Made by a program: the position numbers and the translations under genes
DNA from: Mustelus asterias
Lineage: Eukaryota
Reading direction: 5' to 3'
DNA: 64,000 nucleotides
Assembly: GCF_964213995.1 (NCBI RefSeq)
Contig: NC_135806.1
Location: forward strand, 139,438,001-139,502,000
Notes under the pieces: model-generated
Told to the model about the DNA's origin: nothing
Databases searched by the model: none
What the model saw: the letters and a program-made list of their open reading frames with translations, nothing else
In this document: positions 9,797 to 43,665 of the stretch, one piece after another
How the letters are laid out: each line of letters starts with the position of its first letter
Numbering within the stretch: position 1 is the stretch's first letter

Positions 9797-9854
9797 ATGA
9801 AGAGAATGCTGTGGATCGTGCTGTGTACACTCACAGTGCGCAGCTCAGCAGAAT
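9797..9854 (+). CDS. Exon 1: signal peptide [19 protein letters not shown]
   Basis: ATG at 9797, basic-hydrophobic-small residue pattern, donor GTATGT at 9855 in phase 1, unique non-repeat sequence. Confidence 0.75.
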
Positions 9855-12800: not shown

Positions 12801-15800
12801 TGTGACTCCTAACATTCCTCTGAAATGTCATTCCGTTCAAGGCCACATCCCATGAATGAATAAAACAAATGGCCTGCCCCGTATCCTGAGAATGTGACCC
12901 TTTGTTCTAGACACCAGCCGGGGCAAAGATCATCCCTGCATCCAGTCTGTCCAGCTCTGTCAGAATTTAAAGATTTTAATCAGATTCCCTCTCATTCTTC
13001 TAAACTCCAGTGAATAGAACATTGTCGACCCAATCTCTCCTCATACGTCAACCCTGCCTGCCCAGGAATCGGTCTGGTCAACCTTCACTGCACCCCCTCC
13101 AATGGCAAGTAAATACTTTCTTAGGCTGGAGACTCTTGGCCAATCCTGAAGGGTTGGAACCATTGCCTCTTGAGGGGGATCAATACCCATATTAATAATT
13201 ATGGAGGAAAATAATAGCCACATGAATAACTGTGTCCAGTGAAAGGGTTAACATGGACAAATCACAGAGCTTACCCAATGTGTAATTACAAGGTGGTTAT
13301 TACAAGCAACTAGTTCCGGACACTTGACCTTCAGGTAAAGAAGGGAGAAAGGTACTATGCTGGGAGAAGGCTTTTACATCCCACTGGACAAGGGAGTGAC
13401 CCGTGTTCGGGTATGTAGACACAGTTGGAATGTCTAAAGATAGAGGAAAATAATACTCAAATGAGGCAGTGAAAACCTCACGTCTATTGGATATTATAAT
13501 TAAGCAAGTGCAAGGTGATTGTGATTGGTTTTAAATATTACACTTTTATGATGTTACATTAACTATTAACTGTGATTGGATGGAGATAACTCCTATTCTG
13601 TTGTTGGTGTATGCTAATTATTTGTAATCATAGCTGAGACTTTAATTGCCTTTATATCTCTGAATTCTTTACTCTGAATGGACATTCAGGGGCCGATAGC
13701 TATTGTAAAGTTCATCTTCAAACCATTCCATTACTTTGGCTACTTGAGGGGAATACAGCAAGAAAGCCTTCGTAACAGCTTCCATCCCAGTTAGGTGTTT
13801 AAACGGCATTTTGTGTTTTCCAGTTAGCCGTCGGAATGGCTGGAGCATGGAGACAGCGGAGGAGGTGACAGGGAGGGAAGGAAAAGCTACTGTTCTGTTC
13901 TGCAAATTCACTCACCCTTACTCGGGATATAATGGCAACATCACGGTCAAATGGATAAAAGAAAAGAAAGTGATGTTTAGTTTTACAAATCATCCAACAC
14001 AAAACGCAACGGGCAGAAAGTTTCAGAATGTGATCAACCTGAATTTTAACAATCGTTACCAAATTCTGGGAAACCCGAGGAAGAACAAAATTTCAATCAT
14101 CATCAAACAGCTGAATAAAGAGGACACAAGAAATAAATACAGCTGTCGCGTGGAGTTCGATAACAAACCAAAAGCAGCTTATGAATTGGAGCACGGAGTT
14201 CTCACAATGAGAGGTGAGGAATATTTCAAATTCGATACAAGATTGTATGTAAAGTCAATCCAAACACAAACACAAAATGTTTTAAAGATGTGCAGCTGAG
14301 GTGCATTGGCCATGCTAAATTGCCCCTTAGTGTCCCGGGATGTGTAGGTTAGAGGGATTAGCGGGGTAAATACGTGGGGTTACGGGGACAGGTGGGATTG
14401 TTGTCAGTGCAGACTCGATGGGCTGAATGGCCTCCTTCTGCACTGTAAAGTTTCTATGATTCTGTGATAAAGAGTTCATTCTTGGTTTGTGGGCAATGCT
14501 GATAGTTATCGTCCATCCCAGGAAGTTTATGGGGCATCTTCTTCCTGAATCACTGATGATTCACTGGGCCACTGGGAGACGGCAACTTTAGTGTGGAATG
14601 GATTGCCCCTAAACCAGGGTGGTACAGGGCAAACTAGATGTCATTCAACATTTATTGCTCACCCCTGGTATCCCTGTAAAAGTGGTGACATAACTGAGTG
14701 GCTCACATTGACACACCCGGTGGCTGGATTGTAGAGGGAGGGATTTGGACTTGTCATGTTTCACATTGCAAAGAAATCTAAAACTGATTAAATATTGACT
14801 CCTGGACTGGGATTCTCCAATTGCACTCAGACCAGTTTTCAAACTCTGCCCGGTTCCCCTCTCTCCTTTGCAGGCTATGAGGCCGGTGAGCCTCCAGGCC
14901 CCGGGGCCTCTCTCCAAGCAGCAGCTTCCCTCTCCAGTAGCTCTCAGCTCCCAGTCTGGCACCGGCAGCAGCAGGTGCAGCAAATCCAGGGTGTAATGAA
15001 GCCAATCAGGCAGCTCCAATCCACTAGGCCCTGCTTAGGACTGCAGTTCAGCAGGCCCAGTCCAGGGCCTGCCTTATACAAGGCTCAGGTAATGGACAGG
15101 CACTGCCTGTTACCAGGGGAACTCATATTCATTGAACTCCACAGGGAAATCAATCAGTAATTTCCCATGGACCTCGCAGGGGTTATCACAAAGGTTAATG
15201 AGATACAGATGGGGAGCACACACTGGATAATGATTTGAGCACATGTAGAGGCATTTATAGATACTGGTGATGGATTGTAGAAATAAGAGTTATGCATTTG
15301 TGATTCACAGGTGAGTGATTAATCTTAAACCCAGAACAGGGAATTATTAGGTGGAATTTAATGTGATGGTGGTTTCACCCGCTGACTGGAGAGCCAGTAT
15401 CACCTAATTTGGGAAGGCTTGCACCATTCAGTGCAATCAGGCACTCACCAGGGCAGCACTGGGCCTTTCCTGTGACCAAGACCCTGGGTGAGGTCCCAAT
15501 CAGAGGCCAGCTACTCTTCATGGCTCAGTGGTGCCACTGTGGAGGATGTGGCTGCTGCTGGTACTACACCCACACAAATACCACGTTAACCAATGGAGCC
15601 AGGCACAGGTGAGTGATTGCAGGATTGGAGGAGGGGTCCCAGGGGAGGAAGTGTGGAGGCGGCGGGTCAGCAACAAACACAAGGGGTGACTCTCAGCAGG
15701 CTTCCCAGTTCCCACAATCCAGTGCTGAGTGGGACCCCCATGGAAGCCCACTAGCAACATGGGAAGCGTTTGCTTTTTGGACTTTGTAACAAGCCCCCCA

Positions 15801-18800
15801 ACCCACCACTGGATTAACATCGGACAAGGGATGAGGTCCTTACATTGACACTAATTGCTAATTAAGGGCTACATTTGTTGGCATGGTGGAAGGATTATTA
15901 TTCATGAAGCTTCTTAAGACACTAAGGGACAATTTAACATGGCCAACCCACCTAACCAGCACTTCAGAGCAGATTTAAATAGCGACTTTTTCTAATTGGA
16001 TATGAGTTGTGTTTAATTATATGTAAGGAGAGGTTTTCCCTGAACATCTTTAAAGACACATTTTCTGTAACTGTGCAATTGTGTTTGGAGATATTTGTTT
16101 GTAATGATTGACTCTGTAATTAAATATAAGACTAAGATTAGGATGAGGATCATCCTTCACTAACTGGCGCTCTGGAGTAGAATGAATTTCAAATGGGAAG
16201 GTACAAGACTGAGATTTACATCTTTGTGAGTGCCTGGGGCGCTGCCTGCTGTGACTTTAGTTAAAGTTAATTTATTAGTCGCAAATAAGGCTTCCATTAA
16301 CACTGAAATGAAGTTACTGTGAAATTCCCCTAGTCACCACACTCTGGCACCTGTTCAGGTCAGTGCACCTAACCAGCACGTCTTTCAGAATGTGGGAGGA
16401 AACCGGAGCATCCGTAGGAAACCCATGCAGACAACGTGCAGACTCCACACTAACAGTGACCCATTCCGGGAATCAAATCTAGGTCCCTGGCGCTGTGAGG
16501 CAGCAGTGCTAACCACTGTGCCACCCCATGAGGGGGGGGCAGTTGTAGACAGAGAGCAATGGGAGTATGTCTCTGTCTAGTACGGGCAGGCTGAGATGAC
16601 TTGTCCATGGTCTTAAGAACAAAGAACAGTACAGCACAGAAAACAGGCCCTTCGGCCCTCCAAGCCTGTGCCGCTCCTTGGTCCAACTAGACCAATCGTT
16701 TGTATCCCTCCATTCCCAGGCTGCTCATGTGACTATCCAGGTAAGTCTTAAACGATGTCAGCGTGCCTGCCTCCACCACCCTACTTGGCAGCGCATTCCA
16801 GGCCCCCACCACCCTCTGTGTAAAACTCTAATATCTGAGTTTTACTTCGCCCCTCTCACCTTGAGCCCGTGACCCCTCGTGAACGTCACTTCTGATCTGG
16901 GAAAAAGCTTCCCACCGTTCACCCTATCTATCCCCTTCATAATCTTGTACACCTCTATTAGATCTCCCCTCATTCTCCGTCTTTCCAGGGAGAACAACCC
17001 CAGTTTACCCAATCTCTCCTCATAGCTAAGACCCTCCATACCAGGCAACATCCTGGTAAACCTTCTCTGCACTCTCTCTAATGCCTCCACGTCCTTCTGG
17101 TAGTGCGGCGACCAGAACTGGACGCAGTACTCCAAATGTGGCCTAACCAGCGTTCTATACAGCTGCATCATCAGACTCCAGCTTTTATACTCTAGACCCC
17201 GTCTTATAAAGGCAAGCATACCATATGCCTTCTTCTCCACCTGTGTTGCCACCTTCAAGGATTTGTGGACGAGCACACCTAGGTCCCTCTGTGTTTCTAT
17301 ACTCCTGATGACTCTGCCAAAGCCGCCCCAAAAGCCACCAGCACAATCCATTTTCATCCCACCAGTCACATCTTCCATCAGACCCGGCAGGAAATCCTCT
17401 CCAATGGAGCAAGACCCATTTTCTCATCCTTTAACATCATCATCCTGATGTTTAAATCCCTCCATGTCCTTTTCTATCTCAGTGCTGTCACATCCTCCAG
17501 ACCAATTTCCCTCAAATCTCAGCACCTTTCCAACTTCACTTCCTGAAGGGAACATTGACTTCCACGTGTTTGTATAAATCTAGGTCGGTGTTGTCTGTCT
17601 TCAGGGATGTCACAGGGGAGATAAACATTGTAGAAACTACATTTAATAAAACTACACGATAGATTAATATCTGTTCTTTCAAATCCTCCCTCCCTCAGGT
17701 CAGAGCGATTCGCGGGCAGTGACTGGGGTGAAGGGAGATTCTGTCACTCTGTCCTGCACCTTCAATCCCCCTTGGCGTTCTCCCAGCTCCCTCACTGTCC
17801 TCTGGATGAAGAGGAATCTACGCAAAGATCCCACTGTTTTTAATTACACTCGTTCCCTCGGGGCTGGTTCTGGCTACACTGACCGAGTCACTGTGAATGA
17901 AGGAGATCGATATGAACTGATTGGAAACACAACCCAAGGAGACGCTTCCCTAAGGATGAGGAACCTGCAGCTGAACGACACCGATGATTACTTCTGTCAC
18001 GTACACATCAAGAATAGGAATCGGGAATGTGTGATTCAGGATGTGATGCAACTCCAGGTTGTTGGTAAGAAAACATCAATGTTTGTGATGTGGGGACATG
18101 GATAAAGCATGGTATAGCAGGTGGCACAGTGGTTAGCACTGCTGCCTCACAGTGCTAGCAATTTCCGGCTTGCATGTTGTGGAGTTTGCATGTTCTTCCT
18201 GTGTCGGTGTGGTTTACCATAAGACATAGGAGCAGAAGTAAGGCCATTCGGCCCATCGAGTCCACTCCTCCATTCAATCATGGTTGATTTCAACTCCATT
18301 TACCCGCTCTCTCCCCATAGCCCTTAATTCCTCGAGAAATCAAGAATTTATCAATTTCTGTCTTGAAGACGCTCAACGTCTCGGCCTCCACAGCCCTCTG
18401 TGGCAATGAATTCCACAGACCTACCACCCTCTGGCTGAAAAAATTTCTCCTCATCTCTGTTCTAAAGTGACTCCCTTTTATTCTAAGGCTGTGCCCCCGC
18501 GTCCTAGTCTCCCCTGCTAATGGAAACAACTTCCCTACGCCCATCCTATCTAAGCCGTTCATTATCTTGTAAGTTTCTATTAGATCTCCCCTCAACCTCC
18601 TAAACTCCAATGAATATAATCCCACGATCCTCAGACGTTCATCGTATGTCAGGCCTACCATTCCTGGGATCATCCGTGTGAATCTCCGCTGGACCCGCTC
18701 CAGTGCCAGTATGTCCTTCCTGAGGTGTGGGGCCCAAAATTGCTCACAGTACTCCAAATGGGGCCTAACCAGCGCTTTATAAAGCCTCAGAAGTACATCC

Positions 18801-21800: not shown

Positions 21801-24800
21801 TTCTTTGTTGTCCAAAGCTAAATGGCAGAAGAGGATCTGGTTCCTCACTGAATATTATAATCCAGCCTCCATCTGTTGGGAAATAAACAGTTGAGGTCCA
21901 AAGAGACAAAGGGGTCCACTTATTCATAAAGGGTGATTCTGGTGTAGTGGTAATGTCACTGACTTGTAACCCAGAGACCTCAAGACATGTGTTCAAATTT
22001 CACCGCCGTCTTAACATTGCATAGAAACATAGAATAGAAACCCTACAGTGCAGAAGGAGGCCATTCGGCCCATCGAGTCTGCGCCGACCACAATCCCACC
22101 CAGGCCCTACCCCCACATATTTTACCCGCTAATCCCTCTAACCTACGCATCACAGGACTCTAAGGGACAATTTTTAACCTGGCCAATCAACCTAACCCAC
22201 ACATCTTTGGACTGTGGGAGGAAACCGGAGCACCCGGAGGAAATCCACGCAGACACGAGGAGAATGTGCAAACTCCACACAGTGACCCGAGCCGGGAATC
22301 GAACCCGGGATCCTGGAGCTGTGAAGCAGCAGTGCTAACCACTGTGCTACCGTGCCGCCCGTGCAGTTGATGTTGTGACTGGATGGGAAGGTCCCAGAAT
22401 GAAACTCTGGTACAAAGGATCTTTTTTTTAGATAACATGGCAGGATAGATTCACAACACTGCCTATTAACTTTTAACAACAAAAAAAATTATCAACATGA
22501 AAAGTTTAACAATAATAAAATGCTCCCCCACTCCCACTTATCTATACAAATATTCACCATTTTTAGGAATAACACCAGTTACAAATTATATCCTATTCTA
22601 TAAGAGTTTCAATAAAATATACAGTCCCTGTAAAACAACAGGCCAACTATGGTCAGACGCACCCCACTCTGGGTGAGCGCTATTGCTTGGTTTCAATGAA
22701 ACACCTGTGGATTTTTCCTCAAATTGCCCCTAGATTATTAACCCAAAAACATAGAAAACAGGAGCAGGACTAGGCCATTCATCTCTTCGAGCCTGTTCCA
22801 CCACTTATTATGATCATGGCTGATCATCAAATTCAATAGACTAATCCCATCTTCCCCCCATATTGTTTGATCCCTTTAGCCCCGAGAGCTTTATCTAATT
22901 TCCTCTTGAAATCAGACAACATTTTGGCCTCAACTACATTCTGTGGGAGTGAATTCCACACATTCACCACCCTCTGGGTGAATAAATTGCTCCTCACCTC
23001 AGTCCTAAAAGGTTTACCCATTATCCTCAAACTATGACCCCTAGTTCTGGATTCCCCCACCATCGGGAACATTCTTTCTGATTCTACCCTGTCTAACCCT
23101 GTTAGAATTTTATAAGTTTCCATGAGATCCCGTCTCACTCTCCTAAACTCTAGTGAATATAATCCTAACTGACTTAGTCTCTTCTCATGTGACTGGTAAA
23201 CCTCCTTCTATAGCAAGGACATCCTTCCTCGGATAGGGACACCAAAACTGCACACAATATTCCAGGTGTGGCCTCACCAACACCCAATACAATTGCAGCA
23301 AAACATCTCTATCCCTATACTCAAATCACCCTGCGTTGAAGGCCAACATACCATTCGCCTCTTTACTGCCTGCTGTTGCACGCTTACTTTCAGCGACTGA
23401 TGCATGAGGACACCAGGGCCTCGCCGAGTATCCACCTCTCTCAATTTACACCCATTCAAGTAATAATCTGTCTTCCTACCATATAAGGGATATGGGCAAA
23501 GGCAGTTCAATGGAGCTAGATCGCAGGTCAACTGTGATCTCATTGAATGAATGGTTAAACAGGCTGAAGGGGCTAAATGGCCAATCCCTGTTCCTATATT
23601 CCAGTAAGGATCAATGAATCGGAGTTAACCTCATTGTCCTTTTCCTTCCCCAAGTCCCAGCCACCATCTTGGAGCTGTCGGCAGTGAGCGATAATATAAC
23701 TGGAGAGAGCATTGTGTGCTGGGTTGAAGCTGTGCCACCTGCCAACATCACGTGGATCGATCCTGAGGGCAGCTCAGTGCCCGGGAACAGCACTGACACA
23801 ACAGTCACACGAGAGCTGGACAAGCATCAAGCCATAGGAGAGTTTCGTAACCCAATACTGAGAGGGACGTACAACTGCGTGGCTGTAAATGAACACGGGA
23901 GAGACGTCTGTCAGATCCGCCTCACCGGTGAAGATGAGGACAAGTCCACTCTCGTCCCTTACATTGTGCCCTCTCTGCTCATTATCTCCTTTTTGTTATT
24001 TGGTTTTATTATCTGGATGTTGAAGAGAGGTGAGCTTCACAATACAAATTCTACTGCTGGGAGGGATTGGTGATAATTTTGTTGCATCTTCTAGTTTCCA
24101 TAGATTAGTGGGAGCTCAGTAGCTTGGGAAAAATGTTTGAAACCAGCAAAAGGGTGACTAAAAAAAAACAAAGTGGCCATCTTACAGCTTTTTACAGGAT
24201 CTTTAATGTTATCTCAAACACGTTTTACGGGTATCATGTTTCCTTCAGTGCTTTTACAGTTAATTTAACCCTGAGCTGCTGTACCTTTAGTGGCCACTGC
24301 CTTAGCTGCTCATAGGCTAATGCTTGACTGCAGTGGTGGTGCTGTTGCATTTTCACTGATTCTTTTCCAGTTTATCTCTAAGCTTTGCCTATGAAGCAGT
24401 GATTTTGGTGTGAAAATGGCTGCAGATACAAGGCTCCGAAAACCAGCCATTGAAAGGGGCAATGTTTGTGAAAGTAGCTAGTCTGGAACGTCCCTTTGGT
24501 GGAATCTCTCATGTCCCAACAGCCATTTGCCTGTCCAAAGAGGCTCCATGTCAGGATCAAAGGCTCCGCTACTTGCCCTGAGCTCTCAATGCCATCCAAT
24601 CCTGGCACAGCATTCTTCTCTTACCCACCTCCGCTCAGTGGGCCACTTGCTCAGTAACATAGTGGCACAGAGGCATGGGTGGCATAATGGTTAGCACTGC
24701 TGCCTCACAGCGCCAGTTTGTATTTATATGGCAGCTTTAACATAAGATTACAGGAGAGATCATCCAACAGCATTGGAAACTGCGCCACGTGAGATAGGTA

Positions 24801-27800
24801 ATAGTGCCTTGGTCAGAGGGTATGTTTGAAAGAGTTTAATAAAGGAGGAGATAGCTGAGGAGAGATCGTGAGGTTTAGGGAGGGAACTCGAGAGTATTAG
24901 GTCATCAATTGCTTTTTTTATTCATTCATGAGATGTGGAGCGGATCCTCCACCGGGTGTTAAAAATCCTGCATGCCTGATTTCCTTTTGATTTCTATGGA
25001 AATTCCATCTTACATTTCCGTATCTTTGACAGATCCACGAGGAGGAGGGATTCCTGTTAACAGTGCTGTTGATTCAGTGTCACAGCAAGCGGAGACAGGT
25101 ATAGAGACAACTCGCTTTGCATTGAGAACATTCTTCAAAGTACAAGCCATGAGGCGACATGGTGGCACAGTTGTTAGCACTGCTGCCTCACAGCGCCAGG
25201 GACTCGGGTTCAATTCTGGCCTCGGGTGACTGTGTGGAGTTTGCGTGTCTGCATGGGTTTCCTCCGGGTGCTCCGGTTTCCTCCCACAGTCCAAAAATGT
25301 GTGGGTTAGGTGGATTGTCCATGCAAAATTGGCCCTTAGTGTCAGGGGGACTAGCAGGATAAATACATGGGGTTACGGGGATAGGGCCTGGTTGGGATTG
25401 TTGTCAGTGCAAGCTCGATGGGCTAAATGGCCTCCTTCTGCACTGTAGGATTCTATGATTCTACAATAAGCTTAAAATAAAAATAGAAAATGCTAGAAAT
25501 ATCCAGCATTTATTGTCTTCCCTAGTTGCCCTACAGGAGGTGCTTTTTAGTTGTGACCACACAAATAATATCCTTCCATGGCATTCTTCTATGGGAAGTG
25601 GGGTCACTGGCAAGGTCACTGTTTGTTGACGCTTGTTCCTATTTTTTCTTTATTCATTTGTGGGACATGGGCGTCACTGGCTGGACAGCATTTGTTGCCC
25701 ATCCCTAGTTGCCCTTGAAACTGTGTGTCTTGCTCGGCCATTTCAGGGGGCAGTTAAGAGTCAACCACACTGCTGTGTCTCTGGAGCCACATGTAGGCCA
25801 GACCGGGTAAGGACAGCAGATTTCCTTCTCTAAAGGACAATGGTGAACCAGATAGGTTTTTAACAACAATTCAGGAGTTCCTGGCCACCATTACTGACAC
25901 TAGCTTTTTCATTTCAGATGTATTTAATTAACTAAATTCAAATTTTACAGAGGCCTTTGAACTCATACCTCCAGATCCTTCATCCCAAAGTTTGGATTGC
26001 TAGTCCAGTAACATAACCACCATGCTACTGTACACACAAAGGGCTACTGCCATGGATGACAATAGTGGAATGGTGAAAACTGGGGAGTGCAAGAGGACAG
26101 GCTTGGAGGAGCCCAGGGAGGGGGGAGAGCTGCAGGGGTGAAACATGGCTACAGTCCTGTTGAATAGTTGGGCCGTATGTTGTGCTCAAGGTGAGAGGGT
26201 TGGGAGGAGAATGAGGAGGATAATAAATGGGGTGGAGCAGATTGTCCAGCATGCTGTTACATAACCCCCCTGCCTGATCTTCATTTTATTGATCTCTATG
26301 GACATTCCGTCGATAGGAAGGAAGCACTAGAGGGGGTACAGGAGGATTCACCAGGATGTTGCTGGGATGGAGCATTTGAGCTATAAGGAGAGACTGGATA
26401 GGCTTGGATTGTTTTCTCTCGAGCCGAGATGCTGAGGGGGACATGATTGAGGTGTACAGGGTGATGAGAGTGAGTAGGAAGCAGCTGTTCCCCTTGGTTG
26501 AAGGGTCAGTCACGAGGGGGCATTGTTTTAGGGTGAGGGGCAGGAGATTCAGAGGGGATTTGAGATTCACTCAGAGGGTGGTGAGAACCTGGAATGCACT
26601 GCCTGGGAAGGTAGTGGAGACCAGAAACCTTACAACCTTTAAAAAGTATTGGGATGAGCACTTGACTCTGTGACATTTCTGTATTTTTGACAGATCCACA
26701 GGGAGTTGGAGGGATTCCTGTTTACAGTGCCATTGATCCAGTGTCACAGCAAGCGGAAACAGGTATAGAGACGACTCACTTTGCATTGAGAACATTCTTC
26801 AAAGTATAAACCATAAGCTTAAAATAAAAACAGAAAATGCGAGAAATATCCAACGGATCAGATAGCATCAACAGAGAGGGAGATTGAAGACAAGAGCTCA
26901 CATTTCAGCTCAAAGACCTTTCATCAGGATGGGGAAAAGTTACAGATGGAGCAGAGGTAGGGGGTGAGAACAAAATCATAGAATCCCACAGTGCAGAGGG
27001 AGGCCATTCAGCCCATCCAGTCTGCACCGACCACAATCTCACCCAGGCCCTATCCCCATAACTCCATGCATTTACCCTGGTTAGTCCCCCTGACACTAAG
27101 GGGCAATTTAGCCTGGCCAATCCACCTGACCCACACATCTTTGGGAGGAAAGGGAAAGCCTGTGATAGGTCATGGTTTTTAATTTATTCTTTCACAGGAC
27201 ATGGGCATCGCTGGCTAGACCAGCATTTATCGCCCATCTCTAATTGCCCCTTGAGGAGGAGGTGGTGAGCTGCCATGTTGAACTGCTTCAGTCTGTGCGT
27301 TGTAGGTACATCCACAGTGCAGTTAGGGAGGGAGTTCCAGGACTTTTACCCACAAACACCAGAGAGAAGTCAGACTGTGTCGCTGCACTTTATCTGCAAT
27401 GATAAGAAGGTGTAACTGGGGTGATCAGTAAGTTTGCGGACGACACAAAACTGGCAGGACTTGCAGATAGTGAGGAGCATTGTCAGAGGCTACAGAATGA
27501 TATAGGTAGGCTGGAAATTTGGGCAAAGAAATGGCAGATGGAGTTCAATCCTGATAAATGCGAAGTGATGCATTTTGGTAGAAATAATGTAGGGAGGAGC
27601 TATATGATAAATGGAAGAACCATAAAGGGTGTAGATACACAGAGGGACCTGGGTGTGCAAGTCCACAGATCCTTGAAGGTGACGTCACAGGTGGAGAAGG
27701 TGGTGAAGAAGGCATATGGCATGCTTGCCTTTATAGGACGGGGCATAGAGTATAAAAGTTGGGGTCTGATGTTGCAGATGTATAGAATGTTGGTTTGGCT

Positions 27801-30800
27801 GCATTTGGAATACTGCGTCCAGTTCTGGTCGCCACACTACCAGAAGGACGTGGAGGCTTTGGAGAGAGTACAGAGGAGGTTTACCAGGATGTTGCCTGAT
27901 ATGGAGGAGCTTAATTATGAGGAGAGATTGGGTAAACTGGGGTTGTTCTCCCTGGAAAGACGGAGGATGAGGGGAGACTTAATAGAGGTGTATAAAATTA
28001 TGAAAGGCATAGATAGGATGAACGGTGGGAAGCTTTTCCCCAGGTCGGTGGTGACGTTCACGAGGGGTCATAGGTTCAAGGTGAAGGGGGGGAGGTTTAA
28101 CACAGATATCAGAAGGACATATTTTACACAGAGGGTGGTGGGGGCCTGGAATGCGCTGCCAAGCAAGGTGGTGGAGGCAGACACACTGGGAATGTTTAAG
28201 ACTTATCTAGACAGCCACATGAACAGAGTGGGAATGGAGGGATACAAAAGAATGGTCTGGTTTGGATCAGGGAGTGGCACGGGCTTGGAGGGCCGAAGGG
28301 CCTGTTCCTGTGCTGTATTGTTCTTTGTTCTTTGTTTGATGCAAGTTAAAATAGCTCCTCTATGTGAGAACAGGAGGAGGCCATTCGGCCCCTCAAGGCC
28401 ATTCCACCTTTCACAGATGGTTGGTATTTTAATTCCATTTACGTGCCTTAGTTGCTGATCCATGGATATCTTTACCCAATAATATCGATTGACCTCAGTT
28501 TTCCCGGGATGTATAATGGGCAGACACTTTACCGATTTACTGTCCAAACCATGATGGCAAAAATACTGCCCAAATTCACTCAGTTGCTAATGCTTCACAT
28601 CCTTGATTGGTCCAAACTTGTTTCTTCTTCAGTTCCTGTCATTCTTTTTTATTTTAATCTATTCAGGGATGTGGGCGTCACCAGCTGGGCCAGCACTTAT
28701 TCCAGCCAGTTTTGTGGGGGAGACCAGAATGAGGGTGCATTGTGAGATTGTCAGTGACAAATCCAATCGGGAGATGTGAAGAAACTTCAGTAACAAAAGG
28801 TTTATAAGAGCCATGTTTGATCCTCAATCACAGATTGTAATTTACCACATTCTTCCCGTGGTTATTTCATCCTGGATTAGGGGGTCCTAAACTGGCCTAA
28901 CTTCACCCATATTTCTCCATGAATAAACATCCATCTTTTCTTCTATTTTTGTATCTTTGATAGATCTGCAAGAAGCTGGAAATGATCTAGTTTACGCTGT
29001 TATAAACTTTACAAGGTCGCAACAAGAGGAAGGTAAGGAGATAAATCTATCAGCAACTACAAAACAGAAAGCAAAGTGTGACAGCTCAGGGTGGGTGCCG
29101 GGGCCACGGTTCTTCATGATTAACATAAAATGTTTGGAAACTTGGGGAAATAAGTAGTGATGTCTTGAGGAGTATACGTATTGCAGAGAAGGAGGTGCTG
29201 GAAGCCTTAAAGTGCATCAAGGTAGATAAATCCCCAGGACCTGATGAGGTGTATCCCAGGACATTGTGGGAGGCTAGGGAGGAAATTGTGGGTCCCCGAG
29301 CAGAGATATTTGAATCATCGATTGTCACGGGTGAGGTTGCTGAAGATTAGAGAGTGGCAAATGTTGAGCCTTTGTTTAAAAAGGGCTGCAGGGAAAAGCC
29401 TGGGAACTACAGGCCAGTGAGCCTCACATCTGCGGTGGGTAAGTTGTTGGAAGGTATTTTGAGAGACAGGATCTACAGGCATTTAGAGAGGCAAGTGTTG
29501 ATTAGGGACAGTCAGCATGGCTTTGTGAGTGGAAAATCATGTCTCACAAATTTGATTGAGTTTTTTGAAGGGGTAACCAAGAAGGTAGATGAGGGCATGC
29601 AGTTGATATTGTCTAGATGGACTTTAGCAAGGCCTTTGACAAGGTACCGCATGGTAGGTTGTTGCATAAGGTTAAATCTCACGGGATCCAGGGTGAGGTA
29701 GCCAAATGGATCCAAAATTGGCTTGATGACAGAAGGTGGTTGTACAGGGTTGTTTTTCAAACTGGAGGCCTGTGCCTCAGGGATTGGTGCTGGGTCCACT
29801 ATTATTTGTCATTTATATTAATGATTTGGATTAGAATTTAGTAGGTATGGTTAGTAAGTTTGCAGATGACACCAAGATTGGTGCCATAGTGGGCAGTGAA
29901 GAAGATTATCTGGGATTACAATGGGATCTTGATCAATTGGGCCAGTGGGCTGATGAATGGCAAATGGAGTTTAATTTAGATAAATGCGAGGTGATGCATT
30001 TTGGTAGGTCGAACCAGGGGAGGATTTACTCAGTTAATGGTAGAGTGTTGGGAGAGTTATAGAACAAAGAGATCTAAGGGTACAGGTTCATAGCTCCTTA
30101 AAAGTGGAGTCACAAGTGGAGAGAGTGGTGAAGAAGGTATTTGGCATGCTTGGTTTCATTGGTCAGAACATTGAATACAGGAGTTGGGGCGTCTTGTTGA
30201 AGTTCTACAAGACATTGGTAAGGCCAAACTTGGAATACTGTGTACAGTTCTGGTCACCCTATTATAGAAAGGAAGTTATTAAACTAGAAAGAATGCAGGA
30301 ACGATTTACTAGGATGCTACCGGGACTTGATAGTTTGAGTTATAAGGAGAGGCTGGGTAGACTGGGACTTTTTTCCCTGGAGTGTGGGAAGCTTAGGGGT
30401 GATCTTATAGAGGTCTATAAAATAATGAGGTGCATGGATCAGCTAGAAAGTCAACATCTTTTCCCAAAGGTAGGGGAGTCTAAAACTAGAGGGCATAGGT
30501 TTAAGGTGAGAGGGGAGAGATACAAAAGGGTCCAGAGGGGCAATTTTTTCTCACACAGGCTGGTGAGTGTCTGGAACAAGCTGCCAGAGGTAGTAGTAGA
30601 GGCGGGTCTTTTAAAAAGTTTTTGGACATTTACATGGGTAAGAAGGGTGTAGAGGGATATGGGCCAAACGCGGGCAATTGGGACTAGCCTAGTGGTTAAA
30701 AAACTGGCATCATGGACAAGTTGGGCCGAAGGGCCTGTTTCCATGCTGTAAACCTCTATGATTCTATGATTGGGAAGGTAGTGGAGGCCGGAAATCTTAG

Positions 30801-36800: not shown

Positions 36801-39800
36801 CAACTGAAAGAAAAAACGTTCAATTTCACCAAGATCAGTGGCATGTCAGAAAATTGAACAGAATATAAAAAATAACTAAAAAAAGGAGAAATTAGAGGAT
36901 GAGCGAACGATGGCTAGAAGTATAAAAGAGATGGCAAATATTCGAAAAGCGAAAAGTATAACTAAAGTAAGCATGTATTCTCGAGAGATTGAGATTGGGG
37001 AATTAATAATGGGAAATGAGGAAACATTGAACAGACATTTTGGGTGAAATTTTCCGGCAGCATGGATAGGCACATGGAGCACACCAGGATGATAGGGAGT
37101 GGGAGAGCTTGATCTTGGTTTCAGATAAAGCTCGGCACAACATCGTGGGCCGAAGGGCCTGTTCTGTGCTGTACTGTTCTATGTTCTAGCAGAGGCAGCA
37201 TACCATTGGCTGGGGGCAGGACCTTCTGGTCCCCCTGAAGTCCATGGCGTTTTGTATCTCTCGCCCACCTCACCACTGGGGAACATGCTGCAGGTGCCCG
37301 TGGGGAAGTAAGTTGTGAAGAGGACATAAGGGAGGGGCAATTCTTCCAGCCTGCTCCACTGCTCTCGCAGCGCAGCGGGGTGGACATTTGCCGAGGTCGT
37401 TCCACAGGCACCCCACTGGCCACCCGGGGCACCACCCAGACGAAGATTTGTAGCATCATCAGCGGCACGGATCTGGTTTCAATATTTATAGTTGAATTTG
37501 CATCTGATTAGCGGGCCCGGGACTGAAATCACTGGGCCCGCTAGCAGCCTCCCCCACTCCCCGCCAGGAGTGGTTCACTCCAGCTGGGTTAACAACAGAT
37601 CTCCACTCGTGAGGAACAATACTTTTCAATGAATACCAATACATGTGACAATAATAAATCAAATCAAAACAGGTGGCCGACCCCGCTGGAGGGAACAGAG
37701 GCCATTGAGCCCCGCCCCAGGAGGTCAGGGGTGAGAGGGGGTGCCCCATTGAGGCCCCCCCTCCCTCCCCCCGGGTGAATCCAGTCTACGCTGTAGGACA
37801 TTTCCTCACATCGTTAAAATCGGGACACCCAGCAGCACCATTCAGCGAGATGACCCCAGCAGAAGTACTGGTTCCTTCACTCCTCCAGACCAGGGCTCTC
37901 AGCCAGCAGGGAGTCAGACAGCACGGCGGTGTTCGAGGGCGTGGTACACGTGTGTGTCGATTATCATGACACAGTTGGGCACCATTTTCAATGAATGATG
38001 ATTGGCCAGGTGCTCCATACATGTTAGGAGTGTTGTTTGTTCTGGATATAGTTTTAAAGTTTGCTGGCTTGCACGCTGCGAGGAGATCGATGGCAGGCCC
38101 AGTAGATTTCCAGTCATTTCAAGAGGGTTCACAAAACTCACAGGAGTGTCAAGGGTTATGGGAAACAGGTCGGAAAGTGGAGTTAAACTCACAATCCAAT
38201 CAATCAGTCTCCTTATCTGAGGAAGGATGTCCTTGCTATCAAGGGAGCACAGCGAAGGTTTACCAGGCTGATTCCTGGAGTGGCAGGTCTGTCATACGAG
38301 GAGAGACTAAGTCGGTTAGGATCATATTCACTGGATTTAGAAGAGTGAGAGGGGATCTCATAGAAACTTATAAAATTCTAACAGGGTTAGACAGGGCAGA
38401 TTCAGAAAGAATGTTCCCGATGGTGGGGGGAGTCCAGAACTAGGGGTCATAGTTTGAGGATGAGGGATAAACCTTTTAGAACTGAGGTGAGGAGAAATTT
38501 CTTCACCCAGAGGGCGGTGAATGTGGGGAATTCACTACCACTGAATGTAGTTGAGTCCAAAGCATGTGATTCCAAGAAGGAGTTAGATATAGCTCTTGTG
38601 GCTAAAGGGAGGAAGGGTGTATCAGGTTACTGAGTTGGATGATCAGCCATGAAGATAATGAATGGCGGAGCAGTCTTGAAGGACCAAATGACCGACTCCT
38701 GCTCCTAATTTCTGTATTTCCATGATCTTATTAAATGGCAGAGTGGGTTTGACGGGCTGAATGGCCTACTCTGACCGCTAACCCTTGTGTCCTTATCTCT
38801 ATTATCTCTATTCTTGTCTCAGTGTCAAACTGTGTTTGATTAGCTCTCCTGTGAAGTGCCTTGGGATATTTCACTGTGTTGTGGGCGCTAGGTAAATGCG
38901 AGTCGTTGTTGGATTTATTGCTTTGCTATTCAGTTGTGTAAAAGGTTTGCAGATATCGATGACAGAGGGAAATAACTGATTGTGTCCTTTCCAGGGCCAC
39001 AGAAACCTGAAGAGGAGCCTGAGTACAGTAATGTTAACATTCAAAACCCTCACCAAGAAGAGACAGGTAAGGAATAGCAACTTAAAGATAGCCGTTAACT
39101 CAGATTCTTACTCTAACTCAGAGTTAAGCTTCTCACCTCACTATGACTGGCAAAACAGAGGGTTATGTATCCTTTAGAACAATGACTGTGAATCGGGCTT
39201 CTCATTGTGCCCCTGCACACCCCAGTGCTGGGGGTGGTTAATGAGGGGGTGTTAGGGGGTGGTGAGTGTCAGGGGTCAGCGATGGGAGAAGTCCTGGTGA
39301 AATTACTGGGATCAAGTGCAGCAGGACATTTTCTCAACCTCTCAAGGTTTTCATAGAATCCCTACATTTTTGTAGAATGAGGCCATTCGGCCCATCGAGC
39401 CTGCACCGACCACAATTCCACCCAGGCCCTATCCCCGCAACCCCATTTACCTTAATAGTCCCCCTGACACTAAGGGGCAATTTAGCATGGCAAATCAACC
39501 TAACCTGCACGTCTTTCGGACAGTGGGAGGAAACCGGAGCACCCGGAGGAAACACACACAGATACGGGGAGAACGTGCAAACTCCACGCAGACAGTGACC
39601 CAAGCCGGGAATCGAACCTAGGTCCCTGGCGCTGTGAGGCAGCAGTGCTAACCCACTGTGCCACCCGTCACTAGTCAAAAGGCAGCAGTTCTGTCGCGCT
39701 GTGTTAAATTGTGACCGGTTTATCAGACAGGGACTTTGTTTGGGCTGATCTCCAGCCTCTCAGTTATCAGCTCAGGGGGGGCAGGTTATCAGTAACAGAG

Positions 39801-42800: not shown

Positions 42801-43665
42801 ATTTGCATCCTCCTTTGTGAAGACAGAACCAAAGTATATATTCAGTTGCTCGGCCATTTCTTTGTCCCCTATTATACATTCCCCCGTTTCTGTCTGTAGG
42901 GGACCTACATTTGTCTTCACCAACCTCTTCCTCTTCACGTATCTACAGAAACTCTTAGTGTCAGTCTTTATGTTCCCTGCAAGCTTAATTTCATGCTGTA
43001 TTTTCCCCTTAATCAATCCCTTGGTCCTTCTTTGCTGAATCGTGTCTGCCAATAACGTAGAGCCACCCATAAACAATTATCCAACAATTTGAATTTGCTT
43101 TCTCTCTGCAATAAATCAATTTAAGAACAGTATGATGACAATGGGCAGTCCTCATTTACAATTACAATCATTGGTAAGGCATTCTGACAGGACACAGCTC
43201 ATAACCAATTAGATTCTGAAAGATTCCCTCTCAGTTGCTCTGTTACAAAGCCGCAGAAAGTCAGGCACTTCTGATTGGAGTGGCACGGTGGCACAGTGGT
43301 TTGCACTGCTGCCTCACACCGCCAGGGACCCGGGTTCCATTCCCAGCCTTGGGTCACTGTCTGTGTGGAGTCTGCACGTTCTCCGCGTGTCTGCATGGGT
43401 TTCCTCCGGGTGCTCCGGTTTCCTCCCATGGTCCAAAAGACGTGCAGTTAGGTGGATTGGTCATGTTAAACTCTCCCTCAGTGTACCCGAACAGGCGCCA
43501 GAGTGTGGCGACCAGGGGATTTTCACAGTAACTTCACTGTAGTGTTAATGTAAGCCTACTCGTGACACTGATAAATAAACTTTAAACAATTCAATGTAAA
43601 AAAAAAACCCTGAAACCAAATTTTCTTTTCCAGCTGTAATTTATGCGACTGTCGCAAACCAGTGA
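9797..43665 (+). CDS. SIGLEC15-like: Siglec-15-like Ig-superfamily receptor, spliced gene: join(9797..9854,13824..14213,17699..18064,23655..24029,25033..25098,26694..26762,28964..29032,38995..39066,43634..43665), about 498 aa; SP-IgV-IgV-IgC2-TM-ITIM tail
   Basis: All exons have AG/GT boundaries in phase 1 and join into one open frame (1497 nt). The first V domain carries Siglec-15 hallmarks (WSM..EV, C.FTHP...Y.G, LGNPR.N, Y.CRVEF, YE..HGV). Probably a paralogue rather than the true orthologue. Confidence 0.85.
9975..10400. repeat. Degenerate AT-rich tandem repeat of about 12 bp (tgaatattatac), interrupted by a tRNA-headed SINE (about 10035-10252)
   Basis: Repeated gaatattatact units flank tagctcagttgg...gggttcaattccc. 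Confidence 0.6.
10545..13125. mobile_element. Cluster of degraded CR1 fragments and SINEs (V-SINEs 11463-11768 +, 11938-12225 -)
   Basis: CR1 3' motifs and V-SINE cores. Confidence 0.7.
13824..14213 (+). CDS. Exon 2: Siglec-15-type V-set Ig domain with the sialic-acid-binding Arg (CRVEF, CGC 14147-14149)
   Basis: Acceptor ttgtgttttccag, donor GTGAGG; translation [14 protein letters not shown]...[14 protein letters not shown]...LGNPRKN...YSCRVEF...YELEHGV. Confidence 0.92.
16615..17312 (-). mobile_element. CR1 LINE 3' fragment
   Basis: [15 protein letters not shown]...[14 protein letters not shown]. Confidence 0.88.
17699..18064 (+). CDS. Exon 3: second V-set Ig domain (no essential Arg: YFCHVH)
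   Basis: Acceptor cctccctccctcag, donor GTAAGA; GDSVTLSC...W...[21 protein letters not shown]-set motifs. Confidence 0.9.
18217..19399 (-). mobile_element. Young CR1 LINE 3' fragment (open 370-aa RT C-terminus) inserted into a V-SINE
   Basis: [13 protein letters not shown]...FADDTK...; SINE halves at 18115-18215 and 19400-19460. Confidence 0.9.
19460..20548. mobile_element. GC-rich non-autonomous element with internal palindromes and poly-G tracts
   Basis: Ends gggagaatcgcccc; related pieces at 1-125, 37380-37770, 44170-45650 and 55078-56742. Confidence 0.55.
20865..21508 (-). mobile_element. CR1 LINE 3' fragment
   Basis: [16 protein letters not shown]...WNSLP. Confidence 0.88.
22021..22360 (-). 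mobile_element. HE1-like V-SINE, tail type A (CR1-like)
   Basis: tRNA head, V-domain, tail gggccgaatggcctccttctgcactgtagggtttctat; near-identical to 45995-46340. Confidence 0.88.
22747..23480 (-). mobile_element. CR1 LINE 3' fragment
   Basis: [11 protein letters not shown]...[13 protein letters not shown]. Confidence 0.82.
23655..24029 (+). CDS. Exon 4: C2-set Ig domain plus transmembrane helix
   Basis: Acceptor tttccttccccaag (in-frame alternative AG gives a start at 23661), donor GTGAGC; C...PPANITW...[12 protein letters not shown], then hydrophobic [25 protein letters not shown]. Confidence 0.9.
25033..25098 (+). CDS. Exon 5 (candidate): cytoplasmic repeat exon [22 protein letters not shown], Tyr replaced by Asn
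   Basis: tatctttgacag acceptor, GTATAG donor, 66 nt, phase 1-1; paralogue of the exon at 26694. Confidence 0.55.
25153..25463 (+). mobile_element. HE1-like V-SINE inserted in the intron after duplicated exon 5
   Basis: Absent from the paralogous intron after 26762. Confidence 0.85.
25645..26030 (-). mobile_element. Second shark SINE family (possibly SacSINE1-like); further copies at about 60470-60690(+) and 62325-62590(-)
   Basis: Shared gaaggaaatctgc.gtccttacc.ggtctggcctacatgtg core and agggatgggcaa.aaatgctg tail. Confidence 0.55.
26694..26762 (+). CDS. Exon 6: cytoplasmic repeat exon [23 protein letters not shown] (ITIM-like)
   Basis: tatttttgacag acceptor, GTATAG donor, 69 nt, phase 1-1. 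Confidence 0.65.
26821..26970 (-). mobile_element. Penelope-type pLTR remnant with a degenerate hammerhead (about 26897-26930)
   Basis: Minus strand CTGATGA-AAGGTC-TTT-GAGCT-GAAATGT next to the aaaacagaaaatgc terminus. Confidence 0.5.
27400..28337 (+). mobile_element. CR1 LINE 3' fragment
   Basis: ISKFADDTK...; (ttctttg)n tail. Confidence 0.9.
28964..29032 (+). CDS. Exon 7: cytoplasmic ITIM exon [23 protein letters not shown]
   Basis: Long pyrimidine tract plus TAG acceptor, GTAAGG donor, 69 nt, LVYAVI motif. Confidence 0.8.
29130..30770 (+). mobile_element. CR1 LINE, frameshifted RT region
   Basis: [26 protein letters not shown] and FADDTK in separate frames. Confidence 0.88.
31212..31430 (-). 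mobile_element. L2-type LINE 3' end with (aaatc)n tail; a + copy lies at 37612-37668
   Basis: tttgatttgatttgatttattattgtca terminus. Confidence 0.6.
32097..32138 (-). ncRNA. Minimal hammerhead ribozyme motif (mirror copy)
   Basis: Reverse complement of 35668-35709. Confidence 0.7.
35668..35709 (+). ncRNA. Minimal type-I hammerhead ribozyme motif in the pLTR
   Basis: CAC-CUGAAGA-AGGGGC-UUAGA-GCUUU-GAAA-GC-UU-GUG: conserved core, stem II and palindromic AGCU stem III. Confidence 0.7.
38205..38720 (+). mobile_element. CR1 LINE 3' fragment
   Basis: [14 protein letters not shown] and CR1 3' UTR. Confidence 0.8.
38995..39066 (+). CDS. Exon 8: cytoplasmic tyrosine exon [24 protein letters not shown]
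   Basis: tgtcctttccag acceptor, GTAAGG donor, 72 nt, phase 1-1, YSNV motif. Confidence 0.78.
39351..39667 (-). mobile_element. HE1-like V-SINE (tail A); further copies at 44490-44832(+), 45995-46340(-), 58427-58730(+), 61305-61648(-)
   Basis: tRNA head, V-domain and CR1-like tail. Confidence 0.85.
40740..40866. mobile_element. Short MITE-like element with imperfect TIRs (GGGCAGGAATTTTCC / GGGGAAATTCGCCC) inserted in a CR1
   Basis: Interrupts CR1 text; relatives at about 40179-40290 and 57470-57600. Confidence 0.55.
41091..43040 (-). mobile_element. CR1 LINE RT region, degraded
   Basis: [36 protein letters not shown]. Confidence 0.9.
43634..43665 (+). CDS. Exon 9: terminal ITIM exon [10 protein letters not shown]-stop
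   Basis: ttttcttttccag acceptor, canonical VIYATV ITIM, TGA at 43663-43665. Confidence 0.78.

What the first reader, a model, noticed from the sequence alone, without database searches (positions are those of the whole stretch)
9797..43665. Inhibitory-type Siglec-15 paralogue in a shark: V-V-C2, no TM lysine, multi-ITIM tail
Seen: nine in-frame exons give a Siglec-15-like first V domain with the essential Arg, an extra V domain, C2 plus TM in one exon, a TM with no charged residue, and a tail carrying PVYSAI, LVYAVI, EYSNV and VIYATV. Known: mammalian Siglec-15 is V-C2 and signals through a TM lysine that recruits DAP12, with no ITIM array. Inference: a cartilaginous-fish inhibitory member of a Siglec-15-derived family, possibly one half of a paired activating/inhibitory sialic-acid receptor system independent of the CD33-related expansion.
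Basis: partly seen in the sequence, partly recalled or inferred. Interest (0 to 1): 0.85.

Follow-up and report, generated by a model that had tools for sequence, protein, structure and literature searches.

The report
Inhibitory Siglec-15-like shark receptor gene
This is an intact shark gene for a Siglec-15-like immune receptor with an inhibitory-type tail, which appears to be the braking partner of an activating twin; similar genes are already predicted in other sharks and rays, though no paper describing them turned up.

Summary
Nine open exons on the + strand (9797-43665), all with AG/GT splice sites and all in phase 1, encode these parts:
- a signal peptide;
- V1, a V domain whose best solved match in sequence and fold is human Siglec-15 (7ZOZ), with the essential Arg kept;
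- V2, a second V domain with His in place of that Arg;
- C2 plus an uncharged TM, in one exon;
- five tail mini-exons.

Only two of the four Tyr motifs (LVYAVI, VIYATV) fit the ITIM consensus.

The architecture is not new to databases. RefSeq holds predicted V-V-C2 proteins with an uncharged TM and a Tyr-rich tail from Heptranchias, rays and chimaera, under misleading names. It also holds about 400-aa V-V-C2 partners with a TM Lys from 14 chondrichthyan species. The searches listed under Tried and rejected found no paper describing them.

New here:
- The window's V2 and C2 are 89-90% identical to those of the activating Mustelus asterias protein, while V1 is only 52% identical.
- V2 and C2 trees pair activating and inhibitory genes by lineage. 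Trees holding the shark inhibitory domains as one clade are rejected by AU tests, p 9e-37 and 8e-15. This points to concerted evolution of the stalk.
- 9 of 10 elasmobranch activating V1 domains have lost the Arg.

No RNA evidence could be obtained.

The scan had noted this same tail before (s1-893623), and Siglec-15-like genes 237 and 330 kb downstream.

The parts
9797..9854 (+). Exon 1: start codon and signal peptide [21 protein letters not shown] donor, phase 1
   Evidence: Same leader pattern (..SAE/K then ..NGWSME) as P0003, P0007 and P0008.
13824..14213 (+). Exon 2: V1, Siglec-15-like V-set domain. Essential Arg codon CGC at 14147-14149; Tyr at 14180-14182.
   Evidence: AlphaFold model pLDDT 92.1. 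Best PDB fold match 7zoz_A, E 7.1e-11, TM 0.81/0.83.
17699..18064 (+). Exon 3: V2, second V-set domain. His (CAC, 17998-18000) stands where V1 has the Arg.
   Evidence: 89% identical to V2 of Mustelus asterias P0143. Sister to it at 100/100.
23655..24029 (+). Exon 4: C2-type Ig domain, stalk and uncharged transmembrane segment (TM at 23951-24022), ending in KR
   Evidence: C2 is 90% identical to P0143. DNA contigs agree letter for letter.
25033..25098 (+). Exon 5a: tail mini-exon without Tyr ([22 protein letters not shown]), a duplicate of exon 5
   Evidence: 88.7% DNA identity over 142 bp with 26673-26814. A Tyr-less first mini-exon is also present in P0003 (PVHSVV) and P0149.
26694..26762 (+). 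Exon 5: tail mini-exon with IPVYSAI (ITIM-like, Pro at -2)
28964..29032 (+). Exon 6: tail mini-exon with DLVYAVI (canonical ITIM)
38995..39066 (+). Exon 8: tail mini-exon with EPEYSNV (YxN, ITIM-like; kin have SLYSNV)
43634..43665 (+). Exon 9: [10 protein letters not shown] (canonical ITIM) and stop codon TGA
   Evidence: Kin end in xIYA[TA]V.

Best explanation
The stretch is an intact gene for a type I membrane receptor of a chondrichthyan Siglec-15-like family. V1 keeps the Siglec-15 binding-site Arg and the neighbouring Tyr, so it most likely binds sialylated glycans (inferred). V2, which has no Arg, and C2 form a stalk. The uncharged TM cannot pair with DAP12-type adaptors. After ligand engagement the tail Tyr residues would be phosphorylated, and the two canonical ITIMs (LVYAVI, VIYATV) would recruit SHP-1/SHP-2 to dampen ITAM signalling. 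YSNV could also bind Grb2-type SH2 domains. All signalling steps are inferred from motif knowledge. The gene is the inhibitory partner of a TM-Lys activating V-V-C2 gene. Within each lineage the V2-C2 stalks of the two partners are kept alike by gene conversion or exon exchange. The V1 domains have been separate for a long time.
For: Gene model: nine open phase-1 exons with AG/GT sites. V1: Siglec-15 is the best solved match in sequence and fold, and the Arg and Tyr columns are kept. Every exon has a counterpart in the same order in public predicted proteins of other species, namely P0003 Heptranchias, P0149 Heterodontus, P0148 Rhinoraja and P0153 Narcine. Activating partners with the TM ..CLIPL[IVA]KFLLLL.. 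and a 4-9 aa tail occur in 13 species, and Heptranchias P0194 adds a 14th. The window holds no TM-Lys exon. Because C2 and TM share one exon, the two forms cannot be splice variants of one gene. Identity of window versus Mustelus ACT P0143: V1 52%, V2 89%, C2 90%. The same pattern (V1 49-54%, V2 76-83%, C2 74-91%) holds in the 3 other elasmobranch pairs that have a V1 (Leucoraja, Pristis, Rhinoraja). In the V2 and C2 trees ACT and INH pair by lineage (window+Mustelus 100/100 and 100/99). Trees holding the shark INH domains as one clade are rejected (lnL 204.7 lower, p-AU 9.5e-37; lnL 123.0 lower, p-AU 7.6e-15).
Against: There is no transcript evidence. No listed run is on record as RNA, and the four runs laid are genomic: their contigs run from exons into introns, and none of the 15 listed joints is an exon junction. 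The window's own activating partner was not seen. V1 sits on a long branch (0.67). Its sister relation to Heptranchias INH V1 has only 85/84 support, and a clade of window V1 with Mustelus ACT V1 is not rejected (p-AU 0.0845). The AU groups were chosen after I had seen the quick tree. Two of the four Tyr motifs have Pro at -2. Sialic acid binding is unproven: PMC7226832 (passages read) reports, citing earlier work, that cloned zebrafish Siglec-15 bound the tested glycans weakly.
Confidence: 0.72

Rival explanations
1. The gene is intact in sequence but is silent, or is a recently dead copy in a repeat-rich region. The exon chain is then a conserved relic, not a working receptor.
For: No RNA holder was found. 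The gene is missing from the protein collection: neither P0003 nor P0143 as query retrieved it. The introns are filled with LINE, Penelope and SINE-like repeats.
Against: All nine exons are open with canonical splice sites. The binding-site Arg and Tyr, the Ig cysteines and the ITIMs are kept. Exon order matches predicted proteins in other species.
Confidence: 0.08
2. It is an inhibitory receptor, but V1 does not recognise sialic acid. It binds a protein or some other ligand, and the kept Arg is structural or vestigial.
For: V1 is the most divergent part, with a long branch (0.67) and only 52-54% identity to its nearest kin. Related V1 domains tolerate loss of the Arg: 9 of 10 elasmobranch ACT domains, Mobula INH with Q and Callorhinchus P0195 with C. 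Zebrafish Siglec-15 is reported as a weak binder (PMC7226832, passages).
Against: Apart from the window, the Arg is kept in 7 of 10 INH V1 rows. Only the window and Callorhinchus P0195 keep Tyr in the Tyr column; most INH rows have Phe there. The predicted fold superposes on Siglec-15 at TM 0.81-0.83.
Confidence: 0.22
3. The tail is a mixed signalling scaffold and not a pure brake. YSNV (pYxN) would recruit Grb2, the two Pro(-2) motifs other SH2 proteins, and the net output would depend on context.
For: Only 2 of 4 Tyr motifs fit the ITIM consensus. Lungfish 'Siglec-15' P0005 combines a TM Lys with YENV. That YxN binds Grb2 is recalled knowledge, not a call.
Against: The membrane-distal xIYA[TA]V and the [LI]xYSxV ITIMs are the conserved core of the tail in kin. 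Kin have SLYSNV, itself a canonical ITIM, where the window has PEYSNV.
Confidence: 0.2
4. A main product is a short-tailed form made by reading through the E4 donor ([16 protein letters not shown]-stop). That would be a signalling-dead decoy, not the ITIM form.
For: The ORF runs 15 codons past the donor. RefSeq models in Scyliorhinus canicula (P0196..KRGELHNINSTAGR..) and Rhinoraja (P0198..KRGERHHLSSNAG..) end in just such a read-through.
Against: Such models may be truncated predictions. Full tails are modelled in 7 other species. The donor GTGAGC is a good site.
Confidence: 0.12

Closest known systems
Human Siglec-15 (PDB 7ZOZ)
   Same: V1 is its best solved match in sequence (E 2.2e-16) and fold (TM 0.81/0.83). 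Shared motifs: WSM start, FTHP, LGNPRxN, and CRVE with the essential Arg and the following Tyr.
   Different: Siglec-15 is V-C2 with a TM Lys for DAP10/12 and is classed as activating (PMC7226832, passages). The window gene is V-V-C2 with an uncharged TM and a four-Tyr tail. In the tree its V1 lies in a sister clade to the V-C2 Siglec-15 clade, not inside it.
Heptranchias perlo XP_067838218.1 (P0003), RefSeq 'Siglec-12 isoform X3'
   Same: Same parts in the same order: leader, V1 with Arg, V2 with FCHVHV, C2, uncharged TM, a Tyr-less first mini-exon, PVYSII, an ITIM, and a terminal AIYAAV.
   Different: Only 54%, 64% and 71% identical in V1, V2 and C2. It has extra tail repeats. It is an automatic prediction with a misleading name, not a described protein.
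Mustelus asterias 'Siglec-15' (P0143) and the other ~400-aa chondrichthyan TM-Lys V-V-C2 proteins
   Same: Same ectodomain plan. V2 is 89% and C2 90% identical to the window's.
   Different: TM with Lys (..CLIPLVKFLLLL..) and a 4-aa tail. V1 only 52% identical. In 9 of 10 elasmobranch members the essential Arg is Leu.
Primate paired Siglecs (Siglec-5/14, Siglec-11/16)
   Same: An ITIM-bearing receptor and a TM-charged receptor whose ectodomains are kept alike by gene conversion (PMC5701461 abstract; PMC12706041 abstract; listings).
   Different: In primates the ligand-binding end is what the partners share. Here the membrane-proximal V2-C2 is homogenised, while V1 differs at 49-54% identity in four elasmobranch pairs. 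This family belongs to the Siglec-15 branch, not the CD33-related one.
Other ITIM-bearing proteins annotated as Siglec-15 or Siglec-15-like in bony vertebrates (Conger 'siglec 15, like' P0024; Emydura 'Siglec-15' P0048; salamander 'Siglec-12' P0009 and P0011)
   Same: A Siglec-15-type V domain with a Tyr tail (IIYADI/VCYAEV; CTYADL/ITYAEL; CTYADI/VTYAVV). P0024 and P0048 also have an uncharged TM; no TM was found in the two salamander isoforms.
   Different: Different domain plans: V only, V-C2, or V-V built from two V1-type domains. Separate clades in the quick tree.

Membership tests
Siglec (I-type lectin) | N-terminal V-set Ig domain | tested here: met
   Pfam V-set E 1.3e-7, 32.2 bits against a cut-off of 26. 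Model pLDDT 92.1, with Ig V fold matches.
Siglec (I-type lectin) | Essential Arg on the F strand (human Siglec-15 R143, per PMC7226832 passages) | tested here: met
   The window's YSCRVEF aligns with the human YFCRVEF of 7zoz. The Arg column is kept. Codon at 14147-14149.
Siglec (I-type lectin) | Binds sialylated glycans | not testable with these tools
   Needs an Fc-fusion glycan array with an Arg mutant.
Siglec-15 proper | Lys in the TM that pairs with DAP10/12 | tested here: not met
   [26 protein letters not shown] has no charged residue. No TM-Lys exon anywhere in the window.
Siglec-15 proper | V-C2 architecture | tested here: not met
   V-V-C2.
Siglec-15 proper | V domain falls inside the Siglec-15 orthologue clade | tested here: inconclusive
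   V1 lies in an 18-row chondrichthyan V-V-C2 clade (SH-aLRT 93). That clade sits beside a 19-row clade of V-C2 Siglec-15 proteins from sharks to mammals (89). Both are within a 65-row clade (87) whose inner order is unresolved (quick tree, 128 columns).
ITIM-bearing inhibitory receptor | Cytoplasmic (I/V/L/S)xYxx(I/V/L) motif or motifs | tested here: met
   DLVYAVI and AVIYATV fit. IPVYSAI and EPEYSNV do not, having Pro at -2. By the stricter signature in PMC7226832 ([I/V/L/S]xYxx[L/V]) only VIYATV fits.
ITIM-bearing inhibitory receptor | Recruits SHP-1/SHP-2 and inhibits ITAM signalling | not testable with these tools
   Needs pull-down and reporter assays.
Paired activating/inhibitory receptors | A counterpart with a near-identical ectodomain part and a charged TM | tested here: met
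   P0143 (Mustelus asterias) is 89-90% identical in V2 and C2 and has a TM Lys. Similar pairs occur in Heptranchias, Heterodontus, Pristis, Leucoraja, Rhinoraja and Callorhinchus.
Paired activating/inhibitory receptors | Both partners in the same genome, linked | not tested
   There are only leads. Earlier scan notes s1-893206 and s1-891846 report such genes 330 and 237 kb downstream.

The most novel reading that the evidence does not exclude
Cartilaginous fishes carry an ancient Siglec-15-branch paired receptor system, present in chimaera, sharks and rays, that runs the opposite way to the primate pairs. Gene conversion keeps the membrane-proximal V2-C2 stalk of the activating and inhibitory partners alike within each lineage, while the ligand-binding V1 domains stay apart. 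The activating V1 is the best conserved domain across sharks (74-80%), yet it has lost the sialic-acid Arg in most elasmobranchs. If so, the brake reads self sialic acid and the accelerator reads something else, while a shared stalk is needed for a common cis partner or geometry.
Probability: 0.4. Interest if true: 0.65.

Novelty: new member of a known kind. Interest (0 to 1): 0.45.

Why it matters
The literature I could read treats Siglec-15 as a conserved, purely activating, single-V receptor (PMC7226832). This gene and its database kin show that the Siglec-15 branch also produced ITIM-bearing receptors and full activating/inhibitory pairs. These pairs were already present in cartilaginous fishes and arose independently of the mammalian CD33-related expansion.

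The domain-wise pattern gives a testable case for how paired immune receptors evolve under pathogen pressure: the stalk is homogenised, the binding domain has diverged, and the Arg is lost in the activating partner. The gene is also missing from the protein collection searched, so it adds an unannotated member to a family that RefSeq names inconsistently ('Siglec-12', 'CXADR-like', 'CD276 homolog', 'uncharacterized').

Tried and rejected
RNA support. The look-up of sequencing runs listed 15 runs, none on record as RNA. Eleven tiny runs guessed to be RNA hold only 0.05-0.14 of the words. The four good holders (X12-X15) turned out to be genomic when laid: even depth of about 20-27 across exons and unique intron, and no exon-exon joint among the 15 joints listed (665 more were not shown). 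Splicing therefore stays unproven.

More exons or paralogues in the window. tblastn of each exon peptide against the window found no other Ig exon. A scan for further phase-1 Tyr mini-exons between 24030 and 43640 gave only the known ones plus implausible repeat-derived candidates. tblastn with the TM-Lys C-termini of P0143 and P0141 found nothing (best E 0.26).

Finding the window's own annotated protein. Searches with P0003 (39 hits at E<=1e-10) and P0143 (32 hits at E<=1e-20) returned no near-identical protein. Both see only proteins of 0.55-1.75 times the query length.

V1 history. An AU test holding window V1 and Mustelus ACT V1 together did not reject that clade (p 0.0845), so 'V1 lineages are ancient and separate' is likely but not shown for this gene.

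The search of earlier findings by sequence was blank.

Literature. 'Siglec-15'+shark gave 15 papers, none relevant by title or abstract. 'Siglec-15'+cartilaginous+siglecs gave 3, none relevant. Siglec+'elephant shark' gave 5, none on this. 'Siglec-15-like' gave 0. For siglecs/sharks/ITIM/paired receptors with at least 3 of 4 terms, the 15 listed of 71 papers all lack 'sharks'. I read passages of PMC7226832 only; all other papers were seen as listings or abstracts. I did not ask for supplements, and subscription papers are not covered (for example the original Siglec-15 paper cited there as ref. 17).

Each exon was handled on its own. Full-length kin were reached with the public proteins P0003 and P0143 as queries.
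Full report
WHAT IS THERE.

The + strand between 9797 and 43665 holds nine open exons. Every acceptor is AG, every donor is GT and every intron is in phase 1.
- E1, 9797-9854: leader [19 protein letters not shown].
- E2, 13824-14213: V1.
- E3, 17699-18064: V2.
- E4, 23655-24029: C2, stalk and TM, ending in KR.
- E5a, 25033-25098: ..IPVNSAV.., no Tyr.
- E5, 26694-26762: ..IPVYSAI..
- E6, 28964-29032: ..DLVYAVI..
- E8, 38995-39066: ..EPEYSNV..
- E9, 43634-43665: [10 protein letters not shown], then the stop codon.

The rest of the window is transposon debris. It consists of LINE reverse-transcriptase pieces, an inverted Penelope-like pair at about 32-35.8 kb, a gypsy-type element at 50.5-54.5 kb and SINE-like copies. 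tblastn with each exon finds no further Ig exon.

Genomic contigs of public runs X12 and X13 reproduce E4, E5a, E5 and E6 without a difference inside the exons.

THE DOMAINS.

V1 is a V-set domain (Pfam E 1.3e-7). Among all solved structures its best sequence match by far is human Siglec-15, 7zoz_A (E 2.2e-16, 63.4 bits). CD33 follows at 4e-6 and 30.2 bits, out of 41 sequences matched at E<=10.

The alignment puts the window's YSCRVEF on the human YFCRVEF. This is the essential Arg, R143 according to the passages of PMC7226832 read. The Tyr twelve columns later is kept as well.

An AlphaFold model of V1, built from a 40-row alignment, has mean pLDDT 92.1. Its best PDB fold match is again 7zoz_A (E 7.1e-11, TM 0.81/0.83, rmsd 2.6). 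The next match is four orders of magnitude weaker.

V2 is V-set (E 2.8e-18) and carries FCHVHI at the Arg position. Its best single-domain match is also the Siglec-15 V domain (36 bits). CD276 scores higher only because two of its domains are summed. V1 and V2 are 25% identical.

C2 gives weak Ig_3 and I-set matches below the Pfam cut-offs, plus I-set-type PDB matches. The [26 protein letters not shown], has no charged residue.

By the consensus (I/V/L/S)xYxx(I/V/L), two of the four Tyr motifs are ITIMs (LVYAVI, VIYATV). The other two have Pro at -2.

RELATIVES.

The third-best hit is P0003, Heptranchias perlo XP_067838218.1, named 'Siglec-12 isoform X3' in RefSeq. It has the same parts in the same order: leader, V1 with Arg, V2 with FCHVHV, C2, uncharged TM, a Tyr-less first mini-exon (PVHSVV), PVYSII, ITIMs, and a terminal AIYAAV.

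Searching with the public proteins P0003 and P0143, then scoring TM and tails, shows two classes across chimaera, sharks and rays.

(a) Proteins of about 400 aa, V-V-C2, with the TM ..CLIPL[IVA]KFLLLL.. (Lys) and a tail of 4-9 residues. These come from 13 species, and Heptranchias P0194 makes 14.

(b) V-V-C2 proteins, or versions with extra V copies, with an uncharged TM and a long tail carrying PxYSxV, [LI]xYSxV, SLYSNV and xIYATV. These are Heptranchias, Mobula birostris, Leucoraja, Rhinoraja, Heterodontus, Narcine and Callorhinchus (P0195, P0130). There is also a truncated Scyliorhinus canicula model (P0196).

None of the hits is the window's own protein, so this gene is not in that collection.

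Separate V-C2 'Siglec-15' proteins also exist in sharks and rays (P0029, P0170, P0100). ITIM-bearing 'Siglec-15(-like)' predictions exist in an eel, in turtles and in salamanders.

The inhibitory Siglec-15-type receptor is therefore already present in databases, under inconsistent names. My searches found no paper describing it. PMC7226832 treats fish Siglec-15 as activating with a conserved Lys and does not mention sharks (passages).

THE PAIR.

The window's V2 and C2 are 89% (108/121) and 90% (84/93) identical to the activating Mustelus asterias protein P0143. V1 is only 52% (59/113) identical.

The same split is seen inside other lineages:
- Pristis: V1 54%, V2 83%, C2 91%.
- Leucoraja: V1 49%, V2 76%, C2 78%.
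- Rhinoraja: V1 51%, V2 76%, C2 74%.
- Heptranchias: V2 95%, C2 91%, no V1 modelled.
- Heterodontus: V2 85%, C2 99%, no V1 modelled.
- Callorhinchus: V1 87%, V2 93%, C2 89%. Here all three domains are alike.

Careful trees agree. In V2, activating and inhibitory domains pair by lineage: window+Mustelus 100/100, Heterodontus 99/96, Scyliorhinus 99/95, Heptranchias 95/99, Callorhinchus 100/100. A tree holding the four shark inhibitory V2 domains together is 204.7 lnL units worse (p-AU 9.5e-37). C2 behaves the same way, with window+Mustelus at 100/99, a 123.0 lnL deficit and p-AU 7.6e-15.

I chose these test groups after seeing the quick tree, which weakens the formal p-values but not the size of the effect.

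In V1, the window groups with the Heptranchias inhibitory V1 (85/84). In the quick tree the elasmobranch activating V1 domains form their own clade (SH-aLRT 93). The careful V1 tree leaves that part unresolved, and holding window V1 with Mustelus ACT V1 is not rejected (p-AU 0.0845).

Because C2 and the TM share one exon and the window has no TM-Lys exon, the two forms are separate genes and not splice variants. The simplest reading is recurrent gene conversion or exon exchange confined to the V2-C2 stalk.

A hint that the partner lies in the same genome comes from run X12. A 344-letter contig matches 23844-23931 with 4 differences, then departs from the window exactly where the C2 of P0143 and of the window part ways (..IRLT | ..). 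Two unchecked earlier scan notes report Siglec-15-like genes 237 and 330 kb downstream.

THE BINDING SITE.

In the Arg column, 9 of 10 elasmobranch activating V1 domains have Leu; only Mustelus keeps Arg. They have Ser, Ala or Thr in the Tyr column, with Phe in Mustelus.

Inhibitory V1 domains keep Arg in the window and in 7 of the 10 other rows. Mobula birostris has Gln twice and Callorhinchus P0195 has Cys.

Even so, the activating V1 is the most conserved domain between shark orders. Between Mustelus and Cetorhinus or Heterodontus it is 74-80% identical, against 68-74% for V2 and C2.

HOW IT MOST LIKELY WORKS.

Shown:
- an intact open gene model;
- a Siglec-15-type V1 with the binding Arg;
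- an uncharged TM;
- two canonical ITIMs;
- activating twins in related species.

Inferred:
- V1 binds sialoglycans.
- Src-family kinases phosphorylate the tail.
- SHP-1/2 dock on LVYAVI and VIYATV and damp ITAM signals, including those of the DAP12-coupled partner.
- YSNV may add Grb2 binding (recalled motif knowledge).

Open questions:
- Expression and isoforms are unknown. No RNA run held the stretch.
- A read-through of the E4 donor would give a short tail, as in the models P0196 and P0198.

VERDICT.

This is a new, unannotated member of a family that automatic annotation has already predicted in other cartilaginous fishes, and it belongs to the well-known kind 'ITIM-bearing Siglec paired with a TM-charged twin'.

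What is worth following up is the domain-wise evolution of the pair: stalk homogenised, V1 apart, Arg lost in the activating partner. I could not find this described.

I did not ask for supplementary files.

Noticed in passing
window 23844-23931: Run X12 holds a second 344-letter contig (depth 14, against 24 for the main contig). It matches only these 88 letters, with 4 differences, and then runs on unlike the window. The break falls exactly at the C2/stalk boundary, where the activating Mustelus protein and the window gene diverge. It may be the C2 exon of the activating partner in the same individual.
   Followed up: partly
window 24030-24074: The reading frame continues 15 codons past the E4 donor ([14 protein letters not shown], stop). 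RefSeq models in Scyliorhinus canicula (P0196) and Rhinoraja (P0198) end in a similar read-through peptide. This may be a conserved short-tail isoform or a shared annotation artefact.
   Followed up: partly
window 25012-25150 and 26673-26814: The Tyr-less mini-exon E5a and the Tyr-bearing E5 are a local duplicate, 88.7% identical over 142 bp including the intron flanks. Yet a Tyr-less mini-exon followed by a Tyr-bearing one also stands in the Heptranchias and Heterodontus proteins. Either the duplication is old and homogenised, or it has recurred.
   Followed up: partly
window 32346-32977 (-) and 34816-35460 (+): Two identical ORF sets in opposite orientation (GIY-YIG-like end of a Penelope-type element; the 641-aa reverse-transcriptase ORF at 32704-34629 lies between them) form a long inverted repeat in the intron between E6 and E8. 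An earlier scan note (s1-893799) also recorded it.
   Followed up: no
window 50549-54525: A gypsy/Ty3-type LTR retrotransposon with open gag-like (361 aa) and pol (1045 aa) frames lies downstream of the gene. I only describe it.
   Followed up: no
window 11470, 16450, 22187, 25010, 39334, 43288, 46162, 61434 (ORF starts): At least eight copies, on both strands, of a SINE-like repeat whose translation reads ..[28 protein letters not shown].. In the genomic runs it reaches depths in the millions (bins at 25072-25439).
   Followed up: no
proteins P0141-P0152 (other species): The TM of the activating V-V-C2 proteins (..CLIPL[IV]KFLLLLITGIILF.KIK.) is nearly invariant from sharks to rays, far more conserved than their Ig domains. 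Nine of ten of them carry Leu in place of the sialic-acid Arg.
   Followed up: partly
proteins P0029, P0170, P0100, P0203 (other species): The V-C2 proteins that RefSeq names Siglec-15 in sharks and rays have no mid-TM Lys (lamnid sharks have one at the outer edge, rays none) and carry one tail Tyr motif (LDYSEV, QQYSKV). It is therefore unclear which chondrichthyan gene is the true orthologue of tetrapod Siglec-15.
   Followed up: partly
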